Shown here: positions 15,437 through 23,013 of the stretch, one piece after another
Numbering within the stretch: position 1 is the stretch's first letter
Layout: each line of letters opens with the position of its first letter
Source of the DNA: Vitrella brassicaformis CCMP3155
Lineage: Eukaryota > Protista > Chromerida
Assembly (NCBI GenBank): GCA_001179505.1
Contig: CDMY01000494.1
Span: 1 to 64,000, forward strand
DNA: 64,000 nt
Direction: 5' to 3'
Translations under genes and position numbers: made by a program
The notes under the pieces: model-generated
What the model was told of the DNA's origin: nothing
What the model saw: the letters and a program-made list of their open reading frames with translations, nothing else
Database searches by the model: none

Positions 15437-16067
15437 GCATGTGTTTAGTCACTGTCGTTTTTTGTTCGGGCCAGTGCGGCACGTGTGCTGGCTGTTTCTG
15501 CACGGAACAGAAGATAGGAACGACGCGTGAAAATCGAAGAGTGCCAGCCGACTGATCTCATCATTTTACCTCCATCTCCCTCTCCACCGCAGGCCTACGC
15601 ACACACACGCGCGCACACGCGGAGAGAGAAAGAGGGTCGTGGACTCATCGATGTGGATATTCGTGGGCAGGTTTACCCCGAGAGGCCAAGGAAACAGCAT
15701 ATGGCGGGCATCCCGTCTGAATGGGCGACGACAAGAGATGTGTGACTTTGCAGCCTTGCTCATGTGAAAGGACCGTGTCTTTTCGTGGCACACCGTGTGT
15801 TTCGTTGCACTCGAATGTCAGATGTTGTAGATCTTGCTGGTTGGGCTCCACAAGGTGCGTTCAATCCTCAACTCAAAAGATCCGCAAATCTAAGCTCGCA
15901 TGCCGGGGGCCCTGAAACCCCGGGGCCAGCCTCAAACAACGAGGCCAAGTTCACGATGATTCGATTGAAGGCAATACACCGTGCAGTCTATCAACACCGC
16001 CCCCATACGCAGAGAGTAGCACGCATCCACACATTCTCATCCACCCAGTGTGAGTCGAGTCACGCAT

Positions 16068-19000
16068 CTATCGCACGATCTCCCCCTCCTGCTTCATGTG
16101 CTCCACCTCCCCGTTGCACTGTGGGCACCGCAGCGGCTCGCCCGTCTGCTTTGCCCGGCCACACCAGCCCTCCTTGCATGGGTGGCACAGGCAGATGTGC
16201 AGACAGGGGAAGAACCGCCATACGGCATAGGTGTCGTTACCACACACCAGACACTTCGGCTGGCTGAGGTGGCGGGCTTGCTTGGTCGCCGCTGCGAAGA
16301 TCTGAGCTAGGTTGGTCTGCTGCTGCGTCGCCATGGCCATGAAGGCGTCCAGCTCCTCGGTGCTCTGAGTCTCCAGCAACGCATCCACCGTCAGACTGAC
16401 ACGACAGACACCACGATTACAACACATGCACAGTGAGTGGGTGTGTGGGGCACTCGTTGCTGCTCACTTGGGTCGTTTCTTGACTTCGTTCCGGAGTGCA
16501 TCGATCTGCCCGATCTGGGCGGCGTAGCTGTCGCGCTCATCCTGACGACGCTGACACTCATCTACCAACCTGCACACACATGGCACCGAGGACAGAGGGA
16601 TTCTGTGGCGGGTGACTGATTCGGTGTCCCTCTCATCTCCCTTTCCACTCACCGGTCGATCTTGGCCTGCATTTGCTCTACTTGCATGCGATGGACAGCC
16701 GCCTCCTGCTCCAGCTGGGCAGACACACTGCACACACCGCATCATAATGAACACCGAGACATCTGTGAAAGCTGGTGGATGTGGATGTCCATGTCACTCA
16801 GGCGACTGACCGACCTCGGGGGCTGCTCCTGGCGTTGCAGCAGTTGGTGACGCAGCTGGGCCCGCAAGCTGAAGCCAAAACACGTCCCACTCACACACAC
16901 ATGGATCTGCCGGCGCACACAGCCGTGATGGGTCCTACCGCTGGATGTCTTCATCCCGTTGCTGGCACAACGCCTGCTGCTGCTGCAGCCGCCCGGTCAA
17001 CCTGCACACAAAAGAGGGCGGAATATGGATGGATGATGGTGCGATCATGTGTGGGACCGATTCCACTGACCCCTGTATGGTGAACTCCTGCTCGCGTATG
17101 TGCTGGCCGTGCACCGCCTCGACAGATCGCAACCTGACAGTGGATGAAGAGGCAGACACGTGTGTAAGGATGGGTCAGGTCCCCGTTCCCTGTGTGGCGT
17201 GGTTGTCTGACTTACTTGTCCTCCTGTGCGGCAAGGGCATCCCTGAGGGCCTCCTCAACCGCACGCACACGTTTCTCGCACTCCACCTTGGCCTCACGCA
17301 ACCTACACCCATTGATGCATCCATGACCATGACGGAGCATGTGTGTTGCCAGCCTCTTGTTTGGTGTGGATTGATGGGTGGATGGATGGATGGATGGAGC
17401 GTGCCTGCTTGTCTATCTCGCCCTGCAGCTCAGACACCACCCTGCACACAAAACAGAGAGACAAAGCACCTTTTAAATGCACTGCCCAGCCCGTCAGCCC
17501 CACGTGCATGTGTGGCCTTTCTGTACCTCTCGTGCAGAGCCCGCGAGACGCCGCCCATGGCCTCTGTCTGGCCGACCTTGGGAGGCGTTTGGTGCTCGCG
17601 TGTCGACTCCGATGCCTTGGACGCACACCGCCCCTTGCTGGTGGGGAGGGGGCTGGCCTTCTCGGGCTTGGCAGATGGCTTGGTGGTGTCGGTAGAGCGG
17701 GTGTCGGTGGGGGTGAGGGCAGCGAAGGGGTTGTTGAGGAGGGGACTGTCAGACGAGATGTCGTCTTCATCATCAGCAGCAGACACACCCGGTGGGCTGG
17801 TCTCCTCCCCGCCGCCGCCCTCCTTACTCCCTCCCTCGCCGCCCCCCACACCACCGTCGCCACCAGCGTGGCCCTTGGGTCTTTTTGGTGTTGTTGTGTT
17901 TCTTCCGGCCCCCCGTCCTGCCAGACTTGGCCTTGGCCGCCGCCTGGCGGGCTCGCTCGTCCTTCTCCTTCTCCCTGGCCTCCTCTGCGATGAGCCTCTG
18001 CATCATCCGCTCCGCCTCCTTCTCCTTGATGCGCATGGCGGCCGCGCCGTCCTCCTGCTGCTGCTGCTCACGCTGGCTGCTGTGGGATGGTTGGTGACTG
18101 TTCTTCTTTCTCCTGGCTGCTGCTGCTGCTTGAGCCGCGTGCACCCCCCTGAGTCACATACAACCAAAGGCAAGATGAGGGACTCAGCCAAAGTGTGTGT
18201 GCTATGTCGGTGAAGGGAGAGGTTACTGCAAGGGCAAGAATCGGTAAGGGATGTTGGGGTCGTCAGGGCACTCCTCCACAATCATGTCCGATCCCAGCAC
18301 AAGGACATACGGATGGGGCAGCTCCAGGATGTTCAGTCTCTGCTGGATGACATTGGACACAGAGCTCGCCTCGAGGACATCGCTACAACTGCTCAACACA
18401 TACACCTGAGAGAGACAAGGCGACAGAGTAGACAGAGGAGCCGAGTTGAGACGTGATGTGCTGTGCTGTGCTCGCAGACATACCATTCCTGTCTCCATTT
18501 GAGTGATTACTGAGGGCCCGTTCAGATCCACACCTGGAACCAAGCCAGCTATCGCCCCCTATTTACACACACGCGCAGAGAGAGAGAGAGGGAGAGATCC
18601 AAGCATAGATTCCCCGCCCCCACGCGCATACATGTTGGTCGATGAGGCCGAGGATGAGGGTGGCCTTGGTGCTCCCACTGAAAGGAATGCCGACCCGACA
18701 AACGCACAGTCCGTAAGCGATCTTTGGTAGTTCTTTCTTACACGGAGTCTCGCACATAGACGACTCCCATCATTCGTGCTTTGACGCTGGTTTTGCTCAG
18801 GTCTATGCCGGGCTTGAGCTCGTTGGTGCCAACCACACGACGACCGCTGCATCCATCCATCCATCCATCCATCCACACACACACGTGTGCGTGTGCATGG
18901 CTTCCGTCACTGCCCACTTGCTACGTATGCAGCAACGGGAGCCAGCTGCCACTGCCACTAGCTCCTCAGGAGTCCTTACGAAAGGCATGCAGACAGACAG

Positions 19001-21551
19001 GGGCACAGACACATCAACCAGACAATCCACGGTGCTGGCCGCTGCACGTACCCCTCACTTACGGCAAATGAGGAATGGCGGGGTCGTCGGGGCACTCCTG
19101 GATGGCCGAGAAGGAAGGGAACGCCACCACGTGGTGGTTCGTCATACCTTTCATCTCAGCGCTGGATGGATAGATTGAACAGTGAGTGATGACACACCCA
19201 CACACCAGACACACAGCGCCACACCTTACCTTGTGTCAGGACAAACGAAGCCTCCATTGAACGCATACACCTACAAATCCCCGACACACACACTGTGCCT
19301 GCCTGCCCGCCCGCCTGCCTGCCTGACATAGAGCCCTTACCTTGCCAGTCTGCACGCCAAATGAGGTGGGAATTGTGGCCAAGATGCTGCTGCCCTGTGC
19401 GTCGTTGATCACGACGAGCGACTCTTTACCCGAGTCGCCAACGGGAGCCCTGAAATGGGACATAATCCATATGTATGGATGTGCATCTGTAGTTGGTTAC
19501 TCCCTGCTTTGCGTACTTACACGGCAGTGACGCGGCCCCTGATGGCGCATTCGAAGTCCTTGCAGCCCGAATGCACCTCAGAGATGGGCACAAACCTGAC
19601 CAGATGAACAAATAGATGACACACAGGCAATGTACCGCCCGGTGAGTGAGCCATCTCACACGCCCTACCTGTCCTTGCTGGACGCAGAGGTCCCCCCACG
19701 GCCTCCACTGGTCCCTTGAGCGGTGAACGGCACCTTGCCGCACCCACGTGCTTCGTCGCCCACGTCCTGCCCTCCCGCCACCTCACTTGCTGCCGACGAC
19801 CTACGCGGATCGTGAAGGGGTGAGAAGGAACCATAGGCAAATACATATCCACCACATCCCCCCACCCCTCCCCCTCCCTACCTGTATGTGTTGCCTGTCG
19901 CTGCACTGGCAGCGCCGCTGCTACTGCTACTGCTCCTGCTGCTGCTGCTGGTGGTGGTGCTGGTAGTAGTGGCGGTGCTGCTTGCTGCCCCGTTGGTCTG
20001 TTTGGCGGTGTAGGAGGGGGTGGGTGTGGGTGTGGGGGAGGGGGTATTGGTGTCGGGGGTGAAGTTGGATGCGAAGTCCGGGATGAACATGCCGCCGATC
20101 TGGACACTGGTCATGACGTTGCCCATGTTGGAAGAGTTGAGCGAATTGAGTAACTGCTGCACCTCACCCAGGTCGCTACTGGCCACACACACACACACGT
20201 GCAAACACGTTCGTGCATTCCTGCACAAGGGTGTGTGTACCTGACTGACGGGAATAGAAACTGAGCTTTCGGCATGGCTGGGTCGTCGTCACACACGGAG
20301 ATCTTGCTGCCGGCACCAAACAGCAGCACACACCGGTGCGAGCACGTCCCCCGCCACGCCTTCAGCTGGGGAACACTGCAAAGAGCGCCAAAATTGGTGG
20401 GGTGCGCCAGATGGAACGACACACAGACAGACATACATGAGCGCATGTGCGTTAGCCACCCCCCCCCTACACACCTGTCCGAGGGCAGCCCGTTGCCTCC
20501 TTCCATCCGGTACACCTGCACCACACAAAGTGGTGTTGTGTTTGCACACACGGCAATTATGTTAATGTGTGTGTCTGGTGGATGGCACGGCTCGCTGTAG
20601 TGACTGACCTTGCCCGCGGCTCCGTCAAACGTACTCGGCAGCAGCACCGGGATGGTGTTCTGGACAGAGGCGTGCCAACGAGTCGTTAGTTGCTTAGATG
20701 CATTCCTCCCTCCGTCCGTTGCCACACGTCAATAGGTGTGTGTGCTGACTTACATGGCCGTCTCCAATCATCCAGGCAGCGTGTGCGGGATAGCCCTCAA
20801 CAGACGAACACAGCCTGACATATATTCACAAGAGAGAATGACCATCGACGCAGTGTGGTGGTTTGGGTGTGATCAGCGAGCGGCCCTGACGGCTTACTTG
20901 AAGAGAAGTCGCGCCTTGACGGCGATGTCAGCCGCGCCGGGGACAATGTCGCTGATACGAACCACACGGCTTTAAACACCACACACACATAGATAGATAC
21001 CCACTCACTCCCACATGTGGATGTTGCAGAGGCGATTGCTTCATCCCTCACCGCTGCTGCGTCGGTGCGCTGCCGACGCGTTCGTACTCCTGTATGTCCA
21101 GCACGTCAGAGCCCACCGAGCTGCACACACGATACATACGCACACACATGGATACATACCATCGACAGACAGAATGTCACGCGTCCGTGTGCTGTGCGGT
21201 GATCTTCTTCCTTCTCGCACAACATGCATTGCATCTCACAATTGTTTGGTGCACTTGGTGACACGTATGATGTCGCGCTTCTTGACCGGGCCACACTTGT
21301 CCACCACAGCCTGCCGCAACCGAGCAGCGACCGAGTCTGAGCCGTCCGGCCGGTCACTCACACGCACATCCCTACACCTGCAGCGACAAACGGACCTCTT
21401 GAGCGATCCGATGGCTGGTGCATGATTTGATGGCCTCCTTCCATACCATACCGTTGGGCCCGACACATGCGATGAGGAGCATGCCTTCGGTGCGGCTGCC
21501 CTCGAGCATCGCCTTCACCGTGCCATGCACCAACGAAGGGGATGCAGCCAT
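16068..21551 (-). CDS. RPA70-like multi-OB-fold protein with coiled coil and C-terminal C3HC4 RING (about 20 exons; two apparent 1-nt frameshifts)
   Basis: RPA70N-like DVRVSD...KKRDIIRV...VLDIQEYE. Three OB-A-like units ending ISVCDDDPAMP, IQECPDDPAIP and VEECPDDPNIP. Coiled-coil exons follow, then RING CLVC...PCLHICLCHPC...CPQC at ~16110-16260. Most splice phases join correctly. Confidence 0.7.
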
Positions 21552-21783
21552 GGCGATGAGTGGGATGGGCCAGATCTCCTCAAAATACCATCAAAACAAG
21601 CCTCCAGGACTCCAGGAACGAGCCCTAAAGAAAACCTCGTGAAACCGATTAATCGGTGTCGAGTCTTCTTCTCGGGGAGCTTCTGCGAGGCAGGCCACCT
21701 ATCAGGAGCTGTCCTGAAGACCGATTGAGTCGATAAGTCGATAGATAAGTCGATAACCGATACCCAAGCCACACACACGAGAT
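21552..21783. promoter_or_regulatory. Putative bidirectional promoter with clustered GATA/TCGATA repeats
   Basis: 232 bp between divergent ATGs (21551 -, 21784 +). GTCGATAAGTCGATAGATAAGTCGATAACCGATAC at 21729-21763. Confidence 0.45.
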
Positions 21784-23013
21784 ATGTCGTTGCCATACGC
21801 CTCGCCGGCCTCACAGCCGCTCACCGGTGTGTATCACAGCCTGGACGACACGTTGCGGGTGGAAATCAGACACTCCTTCATCAAAAAGGTCGGAGAGAAC
21901 AAGAGAGTGGCACGGCAGCAAAGGCATCACGGCGTTGTTCATCTTTGTGTATGTTCCTGCAGGTCTATGGCATATTGGCGGCGCAGCTGGCCGTCACCTT
22001 CGTGCTGGCGGCCTCCCTGACCAGTGCTGCGGCCCTTGCATGGCTCCAATCCCACCCCGCCATCCTGTTCATGGCCATAGTTGTGCAGCTGGGCCTCTGC
22101 ATCAGCTTCATGTGCTGCCCACACCTGCTCAGACAGTAAGAAAGACAGACACACATGCATGGCGCGCCATGCACTCACTCTGTTGGTGACCAAACAGGTA
22201 TCCGACCAACTACATCCTTCTGGGCCTCTTCACCGTCGCCGAAGGGTTCCTTATCGGTGTGTGTAGTGAGAGAGACGAGGGAGGGAACACAAACCAGGCG
22301 GCAAGCGTGTGTTGTGTGTGGTGCGTGGCGTGCAGGTGTGGTGTGTGCGGTGAGCGATCCCGCCATTGTGCTGGTGGCGCTGAGCCTGACGCTGGGCATA
22401 GTCATCGGACTCACCCTCTTCGCATTCCAGACCAAGTCAACCAGCCAGCCAGCCACACATATACACTATCGAGAAATCTGTATTTGTGCGTGCGTGTGTG
22501 TGCGTGTGCGATGTGTCTTCAGATACGACTTCACGTCGTGGGCGCCGTACCTGTTTGTGGTGGCGCTTGGGTTCTTCCTGACGGGTCTGATGATGGGCAT
22601 CATGGGCATGTTTGGGGTGCACATCAAGCTGCTCCACATCCTCTACTGCGGCTTCGGTGTCATCCTATTCTCGATCTACCTCGTTTTCGACACACAGGTG
22701 AGTGAGGTGACCCACCAGCCAGCCAGCCAGCGGAAGGAGCATCCCGGCTGCATATATGCTGTGTCTGTCTGTGTGGCTCAGATGATCGTGGGTGCCAAGC
22801 ACGCCAGATTTGAGTTCTCGGTGGACGACTACTGCTTTGCGGCTCTGATGCTCTACATCGACATCATCCAGGTTCCTCATGACACACACACGCACACACA
22901 CACACATACGCAGGAGAACTGATACGCAGAGACGTGCGTCTTTCTGTTGTCTTGTGTGTCAGATATTCCTCTACTTGCTCCGCCTCCTCCAAATGCTCAG
23001 GAGCTCAGACTGA
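21784..23013 (+). CDS. Bax inhibitor-1 / lifeguard (TMBIM) family membrane protein, ~7 exons
   Basis: Spliced product IRHSFIKK|VYGILAAQL...YPTNYILLGLFTVAEG...FAFQTK|YDFT...YLVFDTQ|MIVG...DDYCFAALMLYIDIIQ|IFLYLLRLL; TGA at 23011-23013. Confidence 0.92.

What the first reader, a model, noticed from the sequence alone, without database searches (positions are those of the whole stretch)
16068..21551. RPA70-derived gene with three tandem OB-A-like folds fused to a coiled coil and a RING E3 domain
Seen: splicing gives an RPA70N-like N-terminus (DVRVSD...KKRDIIRV...VLDIQEYE) and three repeats of one unit. Unit 1 (~20975-20245) reads RVVRISDIVPG..IAVKARL...GKVYRMEGG...ISVCDDDPAMP. Unit 2 (~19600-19060) reads FVPISEVHSG..CAIRGRV..VINDAQG..GKVYAFNGG..IQECPDDPAIP. 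Unit 3 (~18845-18235) reads RVVGTNELKPG..SVKARM..LIDQHG..GMVYVLSS..VEECPDDPNIP. A KE-rich region, a coiled coil and a C3HC4 RING follow. Knowledge: human RPA70 DBD-A, as I recall it, runs KVVPIASLTP..WTICARV...VDESG...KVYYFSKG...VMPCEDDHHLP. Canonical RPA70 continues into DBD-B and the Zn-ribbon DBD-C, and RING ligases such as RFWD3 act on RPA in trans. Inference: this is an ssDNA-sensing ubiquitin ligase in one chain, built by triplicating DBD-A and replacing the trimerisation domain. I know of no described protein with this architecture.
Basis: partly seen in the sequence, partly recalled or inferred. Interest (0 to 1): 0.8.

Follow-up and report, generated by a model that had tools for sequence, protein, structure and literature searches.

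The report
RPA-like OB repeats beside RING module
A spliced gene of the alga Vitrella brassicaformis carries three diverged RPA70-like OB units upstream of a coiled coil and a RING finger, a layout shared with a paralogue, but in this copy the reading frame between the two halves is broken in the only RNA form seen, so a single OB-RING protein is unproven here.

Summary
The last exon is a complete C3HC4 RING, but it scores just under Pfam's cut-off. Searched exon by exon against a profile of 21 real RPA70 genes, the first and last exons of all three units match the start and end of RPA70 DBD-A. The middle exons and the N-terminal domain are not detectably RPA-like. No Pfam OB family hits any piece.

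RNA contigs join unit 3 to the KE-rich exon, the acidic exon to the coiled coil, and the coiled coil to the RING. Two links fail. KE-rich to acidic needs an unobserved 100-nt intron (17926-17827); a paralogue has continuous coding sequence there. The one RNA contig across 17814-17093 contains a 37-nt exon that puts a stop in the next exon. That form encodes about 805 residues without the RING. The 1047-residue fusion needs that exon skipped.

The paralogue CEM16770.1 (OB-like unit, ubiquitin domain, coiled coil, RING) shows that the OB-RING layout belongs to a small Vitrella family. The layout appears new, ssDNA sensing is untested, and this copy may be decaying. The scan's first readers noted that paralogue on other DNA of this genome (s1-239474).

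The parts
21447..21551 (-). Exon 1 with the proposed start codon (ATG at 21551-21549). This is the N-terminal part of a possible RPA70N-like domain.
   Evidence: Open frame and GT donor. There is no RNA contig here. The following 49-nt intron is uncertain.
21052..21397 (-). Exons 2 (21397-21240) and 3 (21120-21052), the rest of the N-terminal domain.
   Evidence: Support for RPA70N is weak only. hhalign puts E2 on the N-terminal region of RPA70 at P 0.05. Pfam DUF5575_N scores E 0.005, below its cut-off.
20241..20969 (-). OB-like unit 1: exons 4-8 (20969-20898, 20814-20754, 20659-20609, 20515-20475, 20375-20241).
   Evidence: All boundaries are GT-AG and in frame. The first and last exons match the start and end of RPA70 DBD-A. 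Exons a, bc, d and e are conserved in the paralogue locus L104, while its introns differ.
19669..20178 (-). Exons 9-10: a Ser/Thr/Pro-rich low-complexity linker.
   Evidence: Translation in frame. A CAG-repeat stretch is shared with L104.
19063..19595 (-). OB-like unit 2: exons 11-14 (19595-19521, 19449-19341, 19270-19230, 19161-19063).
   Evidence: Intron phases match unit 1, with exons b and c fused. The last exon ranks second of 2063 pieces against the RPA70 profile.
18227..18846 (-). OB-like unit 3: exons 15-18 (18846-18742, 18677-18632, 18558-18484, 18405-18227).
   Evidence: RNA contig 6 of X1 covers 18403-18226 joined to 18147-17939. The last exon is the best RPA70-profile hit in the window.
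17927..18148 (-). Exon 19: the Lys/Glu-rich region.
   Evidence: Joined to unit 3 by RNA. It is homologous to residues 380-436 of the paralogue protein. Its frame ends at TAA 17826-17824 if it is not spliced.
17827..17926 (-). Candidate 100-nt intron (GT..AG). It is the only GT-AG intron of the usual length here (the gene's other introns run 49-216 nt) that carries frame 1 into frame 2.
   Evidence: No X1 contig lies on 17815-17909 (most likely 17815-17938), although the flanks have depth 8-9 (depth arithmetic). Its composition is intron-like, CA-rich at the 5' end and TG-rich at the 3' end. Against it: no contig bridges it, the acceptor is a poor GAG, and its 5' part is homologous to coding sequence in the paralogue.
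17527..17826 (-). Exon 20: the acidic, Ser/Thr/Pro-rich linker.
   Evidence: RNA contig 5 covers 17814-17526 without a difference. It is homologous in frame 2 to residues 472-548 of the paralogue.
17405..17441 (-). Exon 21: 37 nt with a GC donor. It breaks the frame.
   Evidence: The length of contig 5 (453 nt) and the bin depths fit only 288+37+87+41 nt. With this exon the frame stops in exon 22 at codon 806. The paralogue has 33-nt and 54-nt exons here instead.
16468..17302 (-). Exons 22-27 (17302-17216, 17133-17071, 17001-16939, 16868-16815, 16727-16653, 16569-16468): a heptad-rich, probable coiled coil.
   Evidence: RNA joints at 17216|17133, 16815|16727, 16653|16569 and 16468|16395. E22 is 87% identical to L103 while the next intron is 49% identical. 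The coiled coil is inferred from composition only.
16068..16395 (-). Exon 28: C-terminal C3HC4 RING and the stop codon (16070-16068).
   Evidence: Pfam zf-C3HC4_3 at E 4.4e-6. PDB matches to CGRRF1 and XIAP. It is 97% identical to P0002 and 96% to the C-terminus of CEM16770.1. Two variants appear in RNA.
16065..17159 (.). Block shared at about 91-96% identity with other genomic copies of the coiled-coil + RING module.
   Evidence: DNA runs X2 and X4 show about 3.5 times the flanking depth here, with a variant sequence. L103 and L104 align here. Introns are as alike as exons, which points to a recent duplication or gene conversion.

Best explanation
This is a transcribed, intron-rich gene of Vitrella brassicaformis. 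It belongs to a small lineage-specific family with this ancestral layout: RPA70-DBD-A-like OB unit(s), then a Lys/Glu-rich and acidic linker, then a coiled coil, then a C-terminal IAP/CGRRF1-type RING.

In this copy the OB unit has been multiplied to three diverged units, behind a possible fourth N-terminal OB. It has no DBD-C trimerisation part.

For the family, the likely working is that the OB part selects a target, the coiled coil pairs two chains, and the RING brings an E2. The target would be ssDNA, or a partner bound in the OB cleft. All of this is inferred.

At this locus the two halves lie in one transcription unit, but the frame between them is not continuous. Exon 19 to exon 20 needs a 100-nt intron that has not been seen directly. 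The RNA form that is seen carries a 37-nt exon that ends the frame in exon 22. The main product is therefore probably an OB-array protein of about 805 residues without the RING. The alternative is that this copy is decaying. The 1047-residue OB-RING fusion would need an unobserved minor splice form.
For: - Exon model and frames.
- RNA joints and contig arithmetic.
- RING.
- RPA70 likeness of the first and last exon of each unit. They are the top 3 of 2063 pieces. Shuffles give z above 7. hhalign places them on the start and end of DBD-A with 0-1 shuffles reaching the score.
- The paralogue CEM16770.1 has a ubiquitin domain and a RING, and its locus holds exons homologous to a, bc, d and e.
- The paralogue's KE-rich and acidic parts lie in one uninterrupted exon.
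- The paralogue has 33-nt and 54-nt exons where this locus has 37 nt.
- The 3' module is multi-copy.
Against: - No profile search or fold of a whole unit could be done, because only single exons could be searched. The OB fold is therefore inferred from its two ends and its length.
- Pfam finds no OB family in any piece, nor in the paralogue's protein.
- The RNA evidence is one low-depth set of assembled contigs, and assembly drops minor forms. An in-frame form could be common. That form would skip exon 21 or use the GC donor 4 nt upstream, as in the paralogue.
- The downstream exons are all intact.
Confidence: 0.55

Rival explanations
1. One reading: the main product is a single 1047-residue protein with three OB folds, a coiled coil and a RING. 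It acts as an ssDNA-sensing ubiquitin ligase.
For: With the 100-nt intron removed and exon 21 left out, the frame is open from 21551 to 16068. No RNA lies on 17815-17909. All downstream exons are intact and spliced. The paralogue keeps the same order in one annotated protein.
Against: The assembled RNA form contains exon 21 and stops in exon 22. No contig bridges exons 19 and 20. The candidate intron has a GAG acceptor and is partly homologous to coding sequence in the paralogue. ssDNA binding is untested.
Confidence: 0.3
2. Two separate genes: an OB-array gene ending at TAA 17826-17824, and a coiled-coil RING gene starting at the ATG at 17559.
For: Frame 1 stops at 17826. The first in-frame ATG of frame 2 lies at 17559. 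No contig joins the two halves.
Against: An OB-gene mRNA would have to cover 17938-17824, and RNA is missing exactly there. Contig 5 starts at least 255 nt upstream of that ATG and holds earlier out-of-frame ATGs. With exon 21 this gene would also stop in exon 22. In the paralogue the equivalent region is one open exon.
Confidence: 0.08
3. The units are not OB folds or RPA relatives. The likeness would be a shared short acidic C-x-DDP-x-x-P motif and chance.
For: Only the end exons match. Exon classes b, c and d give nothing. There are no Pfam or PDB hits exon by exon. Pfam finds no OB family in CEM16770.1.
Against: Two independent exon classes land on the correct, collinear ends of DBD-A about 120 residues apart, which is the length of a unit. 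The shuffle controls are clean. The three last exons are the top three of 2063 pieces.
Confidence: 0.12

Closest known systems
RPA70 (RPA1/RFA1), domains DBD-A and DBD-B
   Same: The first strand region and the last strand plus A-B linker of each unit align to DBD-A in profile comparisons. Units 2 and 3 abut as DBD-A and DBD-B do. There may be an N-terminal OB.
   Different: There is no DBD-C, zinc ribbon or trimerisation part. The middle of each unit is undetectably diverged. By eye, the GEIRATAF aromatic residue is Pro. There is one extra unit, a long low-complexity linker after unit 1, and a coiled coil and RING downstream.
RADX (CXorf57), a single-chain RPA-like multi-OB ssDNA-binding protein
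   Same: Several RPA70-like OB folds in one chain, with no heterotrimer core. Exon 2 gives a weak sub-threshold hit to DUF5575_N. My recollection that DUF5575 is the RADX family was not verified.
   Different: RADX is from animals and has no RING. The similarity here is below any cut-off.
Vitrella brassicaformis CEM16770.1 / A0A0G4FQP4 (RING-type domain-containing protein, 837 aa)
   Same: A paralogue. It has a homologous OB-like unit, KE-rich and acidic linkers, a coiled coil and a RING that is 96% identical.
   Different: It has one OB-like unit and a ubiquitin-like domain in place of units 2 and 3. It lacks exons 23-25. Its frame is continuous. Its annotation seems to mis-splice the middle of the OB unit.
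RING ligases that act at ssDNA or on RPA: RFWD3, RAD18, HLTF (HIRAN-RING), RNF138
   Same: The proposed logic is the same: a RING ligase brought to single-stranded DNA.
   Different: These ligases reach ssDNA through WD40-RPA32 contacts, SAP or zinc-finger domains, or HIRAN domains, not through RPA-like OB folds in the same chain (from my own knowledge). No sequence relation was found.
IAP/CGRRF1-type C-terminal RINGs (Pfam zf-C3HC4_3)
   Same: Same ligand spacing, a position at the extreme C-terminus, and the best PDB matches.
   Different: The score is just under Pfam's gathering cut-off. There are no BIR or other IAP domains.

Membership tests
RPA70 family (Pfam Rep-A_N, tRNA_anti-codon/DUF223, REPA_OB_2, Rep_fac-A_C) | DBD-A OB fold recognised by a family profile | tested here: inconclusive
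   No Pfam hit for any exon or open piece. Even so, the first-exon and last-exon profiles align to the start and end of DBD-A (P 0.005 and 4e-5). The three last exons are the top hits of a local RPA70 HMM.
RPA70 family | DBD-C with its zinc ribbon (Rep_fac-A_C), the trimerisation core | tested here: not met
   No piece of the window matches profile columns 452-597 above noise. The sequence after unit 3 is KE-rich linker.
RPA70 family | N-terminal Rep-A_N domain | tested here: inconclusive
   hhalign puts E2 on the N-terminal region at P 0.05. There is no Rep-A_N hit, only DUF5575_N at E 0.005-0.7.
RPA70 family | Conserved DNA-stacking aromatic residues in the OB cleft | tested here: inconclusive
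   By-eye alignment of the exon-c motifs with the GEIRATAF consensus puts Pro at the Phe position in all three units. hhalign does not support any alignment of this exon class.
RING finger, zf-C3HC4_3 type | Eight zinc ligands in cross-brace spacing and a family profile match | tested here: met
   All eight ligands can be read in the sequence. Pfam gives E 4.4e-6 and 26.8 bits against a cut-off of 27.0. PDB matches are CGRRF1 (E 0.025) and XIAP. The AlphaFold model of the exon alone was too poor to use (mean pLDDT 50).
   The RNA form seen stops in exon 22. The exon 19-20 junction has not been observed. This counts against the main form seen, not against a minor in-frame form.
   Needs EMSA and autoubiquitination assays.

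The most novel reading that the evidence does not exclude
Vitrella has built a lineage-specific toolkit in which RPA70-type OB sensors are fused in one chain to protein modifiers: a RING E3 here and in CEM16770.1, and PARP in other loci noted by this scan. A minor in-frame splice form of this gene would then give a three-OB, dimeric, ssDNA-activated ubiquitin ligase, a direct-sensing alternative to the RPA-RFWD3 and RAD18 route.
Probability: 0.25. Interest if true: 0.7.

Novelty: new variant of a known kind. Interest (0 to 1): 0.45.

Why it matters
Known ubiquitin ligases reach single-stranded DNA indirectly, through RPA or small DNA-binding modules. A chain that joins RPA-type OB folds to a RING would be a one-protein sensor and effector. 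Together with the OB-PARP fusions reported elsewhere in this genome, it would point to an unusual expansion of DNA-damage signalling parts in a free-living relative of apicomplexan parasites.

The finding is also a caution. The layout is real for the gene family, but this copy shows how a reading-frame break and a frame-shifting mini-exon can hide behind an attractive domain string.

Tried and rejected
- Pfam on open pieces and on exact exons gave nothing for the OB parts.
- PDB sequence searches with one exon and one exon profile gave no RPA match.
- The all-representative HMMER search with 18226-18558 returned only a repetitive protein, which I take to be spurious.
- The ESM Atlas feature search gave no usable hit.
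- The metagenome scan with the last-exon alignment found no relative.
- The word search with the C-terminal part of P0003 found nothing. One likely reason is that the cluster representative is a 119-residue fragment, outside the length window. The word search with the 190-residue frame-2 piece also found nothing.
- AlphaFold on the RING exon alone gave mean pLDDT 50, so I ran no fold search.
- I did not use the paralogue's annotated protein to fold an OB unit, because its locus shows the annotation skips the conserved bc and d exons.
- I rejected the idea that the two frame problems cancel. Exon 21 has stops in the other two frames.
- I rejected an assembly error. Two DNA runs from different studies match the window exactly over 17130-18840.
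- A 125-nt deletion between the GGCGGCGGC direct repeats at 17944-17936 and 17819-17811 would give the wrong frame.
Full report
**What is in the sequence**

The region 21551-16068 holds a minus-strand gene of many short exons in a 57-61% G+C genome. Reading the strand by hand and checking every boundary by script gives 28 exons. All have AG acceptors and GT donors except one GC donor.

The order is as follows.
- Exons 1-3: the N-terminal part.
- Exons 4-8: unit 1.
- Exons 9-10: a Ser/Thr/Pro-rich linker.
- Exons 11-14: unit 2.
- Exons 15-18: unit 3, directly after unit 2.
- Exon 19: Lys/Glu-rich.
- Exon 20: acidic and Ser/Thr/Pro-rich.
- Exon 21: 37 nt.
- Exons 22-27: heptad-rich.
- Exon 28: the RING and the stop codon.

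The three units share intron positions and phases. These are phase 2 after the first exon, phase 0 twice (the second just before a 'VY'), and phase 2 before the last exon. One intron is missing in unit 2 and another in unit 3. Together with the common ECPDDPxIP end motif, this supports an old internal duplication. Otherwise the units are far diverged: exon-level BLAST finds little else.

**Organism**

A 90%-identity cluster around the RING exon contains CEM16770.1 (A0A0G4FQP4) of Vitrella brassicaformis CCMP3155, on contig CDMY01000483.1. Notes from other agents of this scan name the same genome. Its lineage is Alveolata, Colpodellida.

**RING**

All eight ligands are present in zf-C3HC4_3 spacing. 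Pfam gives E 4.4e-6 and 26.8 bits against a cut-off of 27.0. The nearest solved RINGs are CGRRF1, XIAP and cIAP. A single-sequence AlphaFold model of the exon was too poor to use.

**Are the units RPA70-like OB folds?**

In one search a script walked the exon list only to test frame continuity; nothing joined was printed, saved or searched.

Exon by exon, Pfam and PDB sequence searches find nothing.

To get a fair comparator, I fetched 102 metagenomic loci carrying the conserved GEIRATAFN motif. I confirmed ten full-length reading frames as RPA70 by Pfam and built a local profile from 21 of them.
- Searched against all 2063 stop-to-stop pieces of the whole 64-kb window, the three best hits are the last exons of units 3, 2 and 1. 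All map to profile columns 248-296, the end of DBD-A and the A-B linker.
- In residue-shuffle tests these exons score 7 to 12 standard deviations above shuffles.
- In profile-profile comparison the first-exon class aligns to the first strand of DBD-A (P 0.005-0.006; 1 of 200 and 0 of 100 column shuffles reach the score).
- The last-exon class aligns to the end of DBD-A (P 7.5e-5 and 3.9e-5; 0 of 300 shuffles).
- The two matches lie about 120 profile positions apart, which is the length of a unit.

The middle exon classes are not detected. The N-terminal exons are only weakly RPA70N-like (P 0.05; Pfam DUF5575_N E 0.005).

I conclude that the units descend from an RPA70 DBD-A/B-type OB domain, but their cores are strongly diverged. 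By eye, the Phe of the GEIRATAF motif is Pro in all three units, so ssDNA binding cannot be assumed.

**One gene or two, and one frame or not**

Run X1 behaves as RNA, because it shows CT..AC joints. Its contigs support these links.
- Contig 6 joins unit 3 to exon 19 (18403-18226 to 18147-17939).
- Contig 5 joins exon 20 to exon 23.
- Contig 4 joins exons 25-28.

Two links are problematic.

*Exon 19 to exon 20.* Exon 19 is read in a frame that ends at TAA 17826-17824, while exon 20 is read one frame over. The only GT-AG intron of usual size that connects them without a stop is 17926-17827, which is 100 nt; some GC-AG variants also exist.
- In favour: no X1 contig lies on 17815-17909, although both flanks have depth 8-9. 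The bin depths are fully explained by contigs 5 and 6. The segment also has the intron-like composition noted for this genome, CA-rich at the 5' end and TG-rich at the 3' end.
- Against: no contig bridges it, and the acceptor is GAG. The paralogue has one uninterrupted exon here (L104 4730-5818). That exon's coding sequence is homologous to the 5' part of the candidate intron. Relative to the paralogue, this locus looks like a +1 shift near 17874.
- Two DNA runs from different studies agree with the window, so this is not an assembly error.

*Exon 21.* The length of contig 5 (453 nt) and three bin depths fit only the sum below.
- 288 nt of exon 20
- 37 nt of exon 21
- 87 nt of exon 22
- 41 nt of exon 23

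With the 37-nt exon the frame reads on into a TGA in exon 22 at codon 806. Exon 21 has stops in its other two frames, so no upstream frame can rescue the RING. The paralogue has 33-nt and 54-nt exons at this place and stays in frame. Leaving exon 21 out gives an open frame of 1047 codons. Using a GC donor 4 nt upstream, at the paralogue's donor position, should also keep the frame; I worked that out by hand and did not run it.

The form seen therefore encodes the OB array without the coiled coil and RING. The fusion protein needs a form not seen.

**The family**

The locus of CEM16770.1 (L104) contains exons homologous to a, bc, d and e of unit 1 with the same phases. The deposited annotation skips bc and d. 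These exons are followed by:
- a Ser-rich linker;
- a ubiquitin domain (Pfam E 2e-7);
- KE-rich and acidic parts in one exon;
- small coiled-coil exons;
- a RING 96% identical to ours.

A third copy of exons 22-28 is held in a Logan contig, L103. DNA runs show about 3.5-fold depth over 16065-17159. There, introns are as alike as exons, which points to recent duplication or gene conversion. Further upstream, exon 22 is 87% identical and its intron 49%.

The chain of links is therefore complete at the family level.
- OB to KE-rich: RNA at this locus.
- KE-rich to acidic: an open exon in the paralogue.
- Acidic to coiled coil, and coiled coil to RING: RNA at this locus.

The OB-RING layout is ancestral to the family. 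This copy carries two frame disturbances.

**Mechanism**

All of this is inferred. In the family, the OB part would select ssDNA or a protein or peptide ligand. The coiled coil would pair the C-terminal RINGs, as IAP-type RINGs act as dimers. The RING would recruit an E2 to ubiquitinate nearby proteins. At this locus the likely main product is an OB-array protein. It could compete with or regulate its RING-bearing paralogues, or the copy may be decaying.

**Novelty**

Literature searches found no description of an RPA-type OB plus RING chain or of this Vitrella family. The big protein searches found no relatives outside Vitrella, but they were limited by exon length and by the length window. 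I rate it a new variant of known kinds. Interest is moderate, held down by the unproven fold core, the untested function and the broken frame here.

Noticed in passing
L104:3765-4301 (CDMY01000483.1, gene of CEM16770.1): The deposited protein model appears mis-spliced in its OB-like unit. It reads the bc exon in another frame and skips the d exon. Exons homologous to ours (ending ...ANTFAGHPGK, and LYRMEGGKALRAEF) lie there with matching phases.
   Followed up: partly
L104 between 6340 and 6641, compared with window 17086-16780 and L103:320-639: The paralogue on CDMY01000483.1 lacks the three coiled-coil exons 23-25 (180 nt, in frame). The window and a Logan contig from SRR29906534 both keep them.
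   Followed up: partly
window 18565-18597: A (GA)n/(GT)n microsatellite inside the intron between exons 16 and 17 attracts very high depth in all runs (about 2000 to 34000). It produces many false 'joints' to 20014-20980.
   Followed up: no
window 17364-17412 and 18841-18899: CATC/GGAT tetranucleotide repeats sit in two introns. The first replaces the place where the paralogue has its 54-nt exon.
   Followed up: partly
window 16945-18213 (+): A 422-codon ATG-started open frame lies antisense to exons 19-24. All frames are nearly stop-free in this G+C-rich low-complexity stretch, so it is probably not a gene.
   Followed up: no
window 17944-17936 and 17819-17811: A 9-nt direct repeat, GGCGGCGGC, flanks the RNA-free gap. 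Both RNA contigs end at the sixth base of a copy. I have no explanation for this.
   Followed up: no
window 16847: The paralogous variant seen in RNA (X1) and DNA (X2, X4) has a 15-nt in-frame insertion in exon 25.
   Followed up: no
window 21780-22930 (+): The upstream neighbour on the other strand is a multi-exon gene encoding several hydrophobic stretches, possibly a membrane protein. It was not examined.
   Followed up: no
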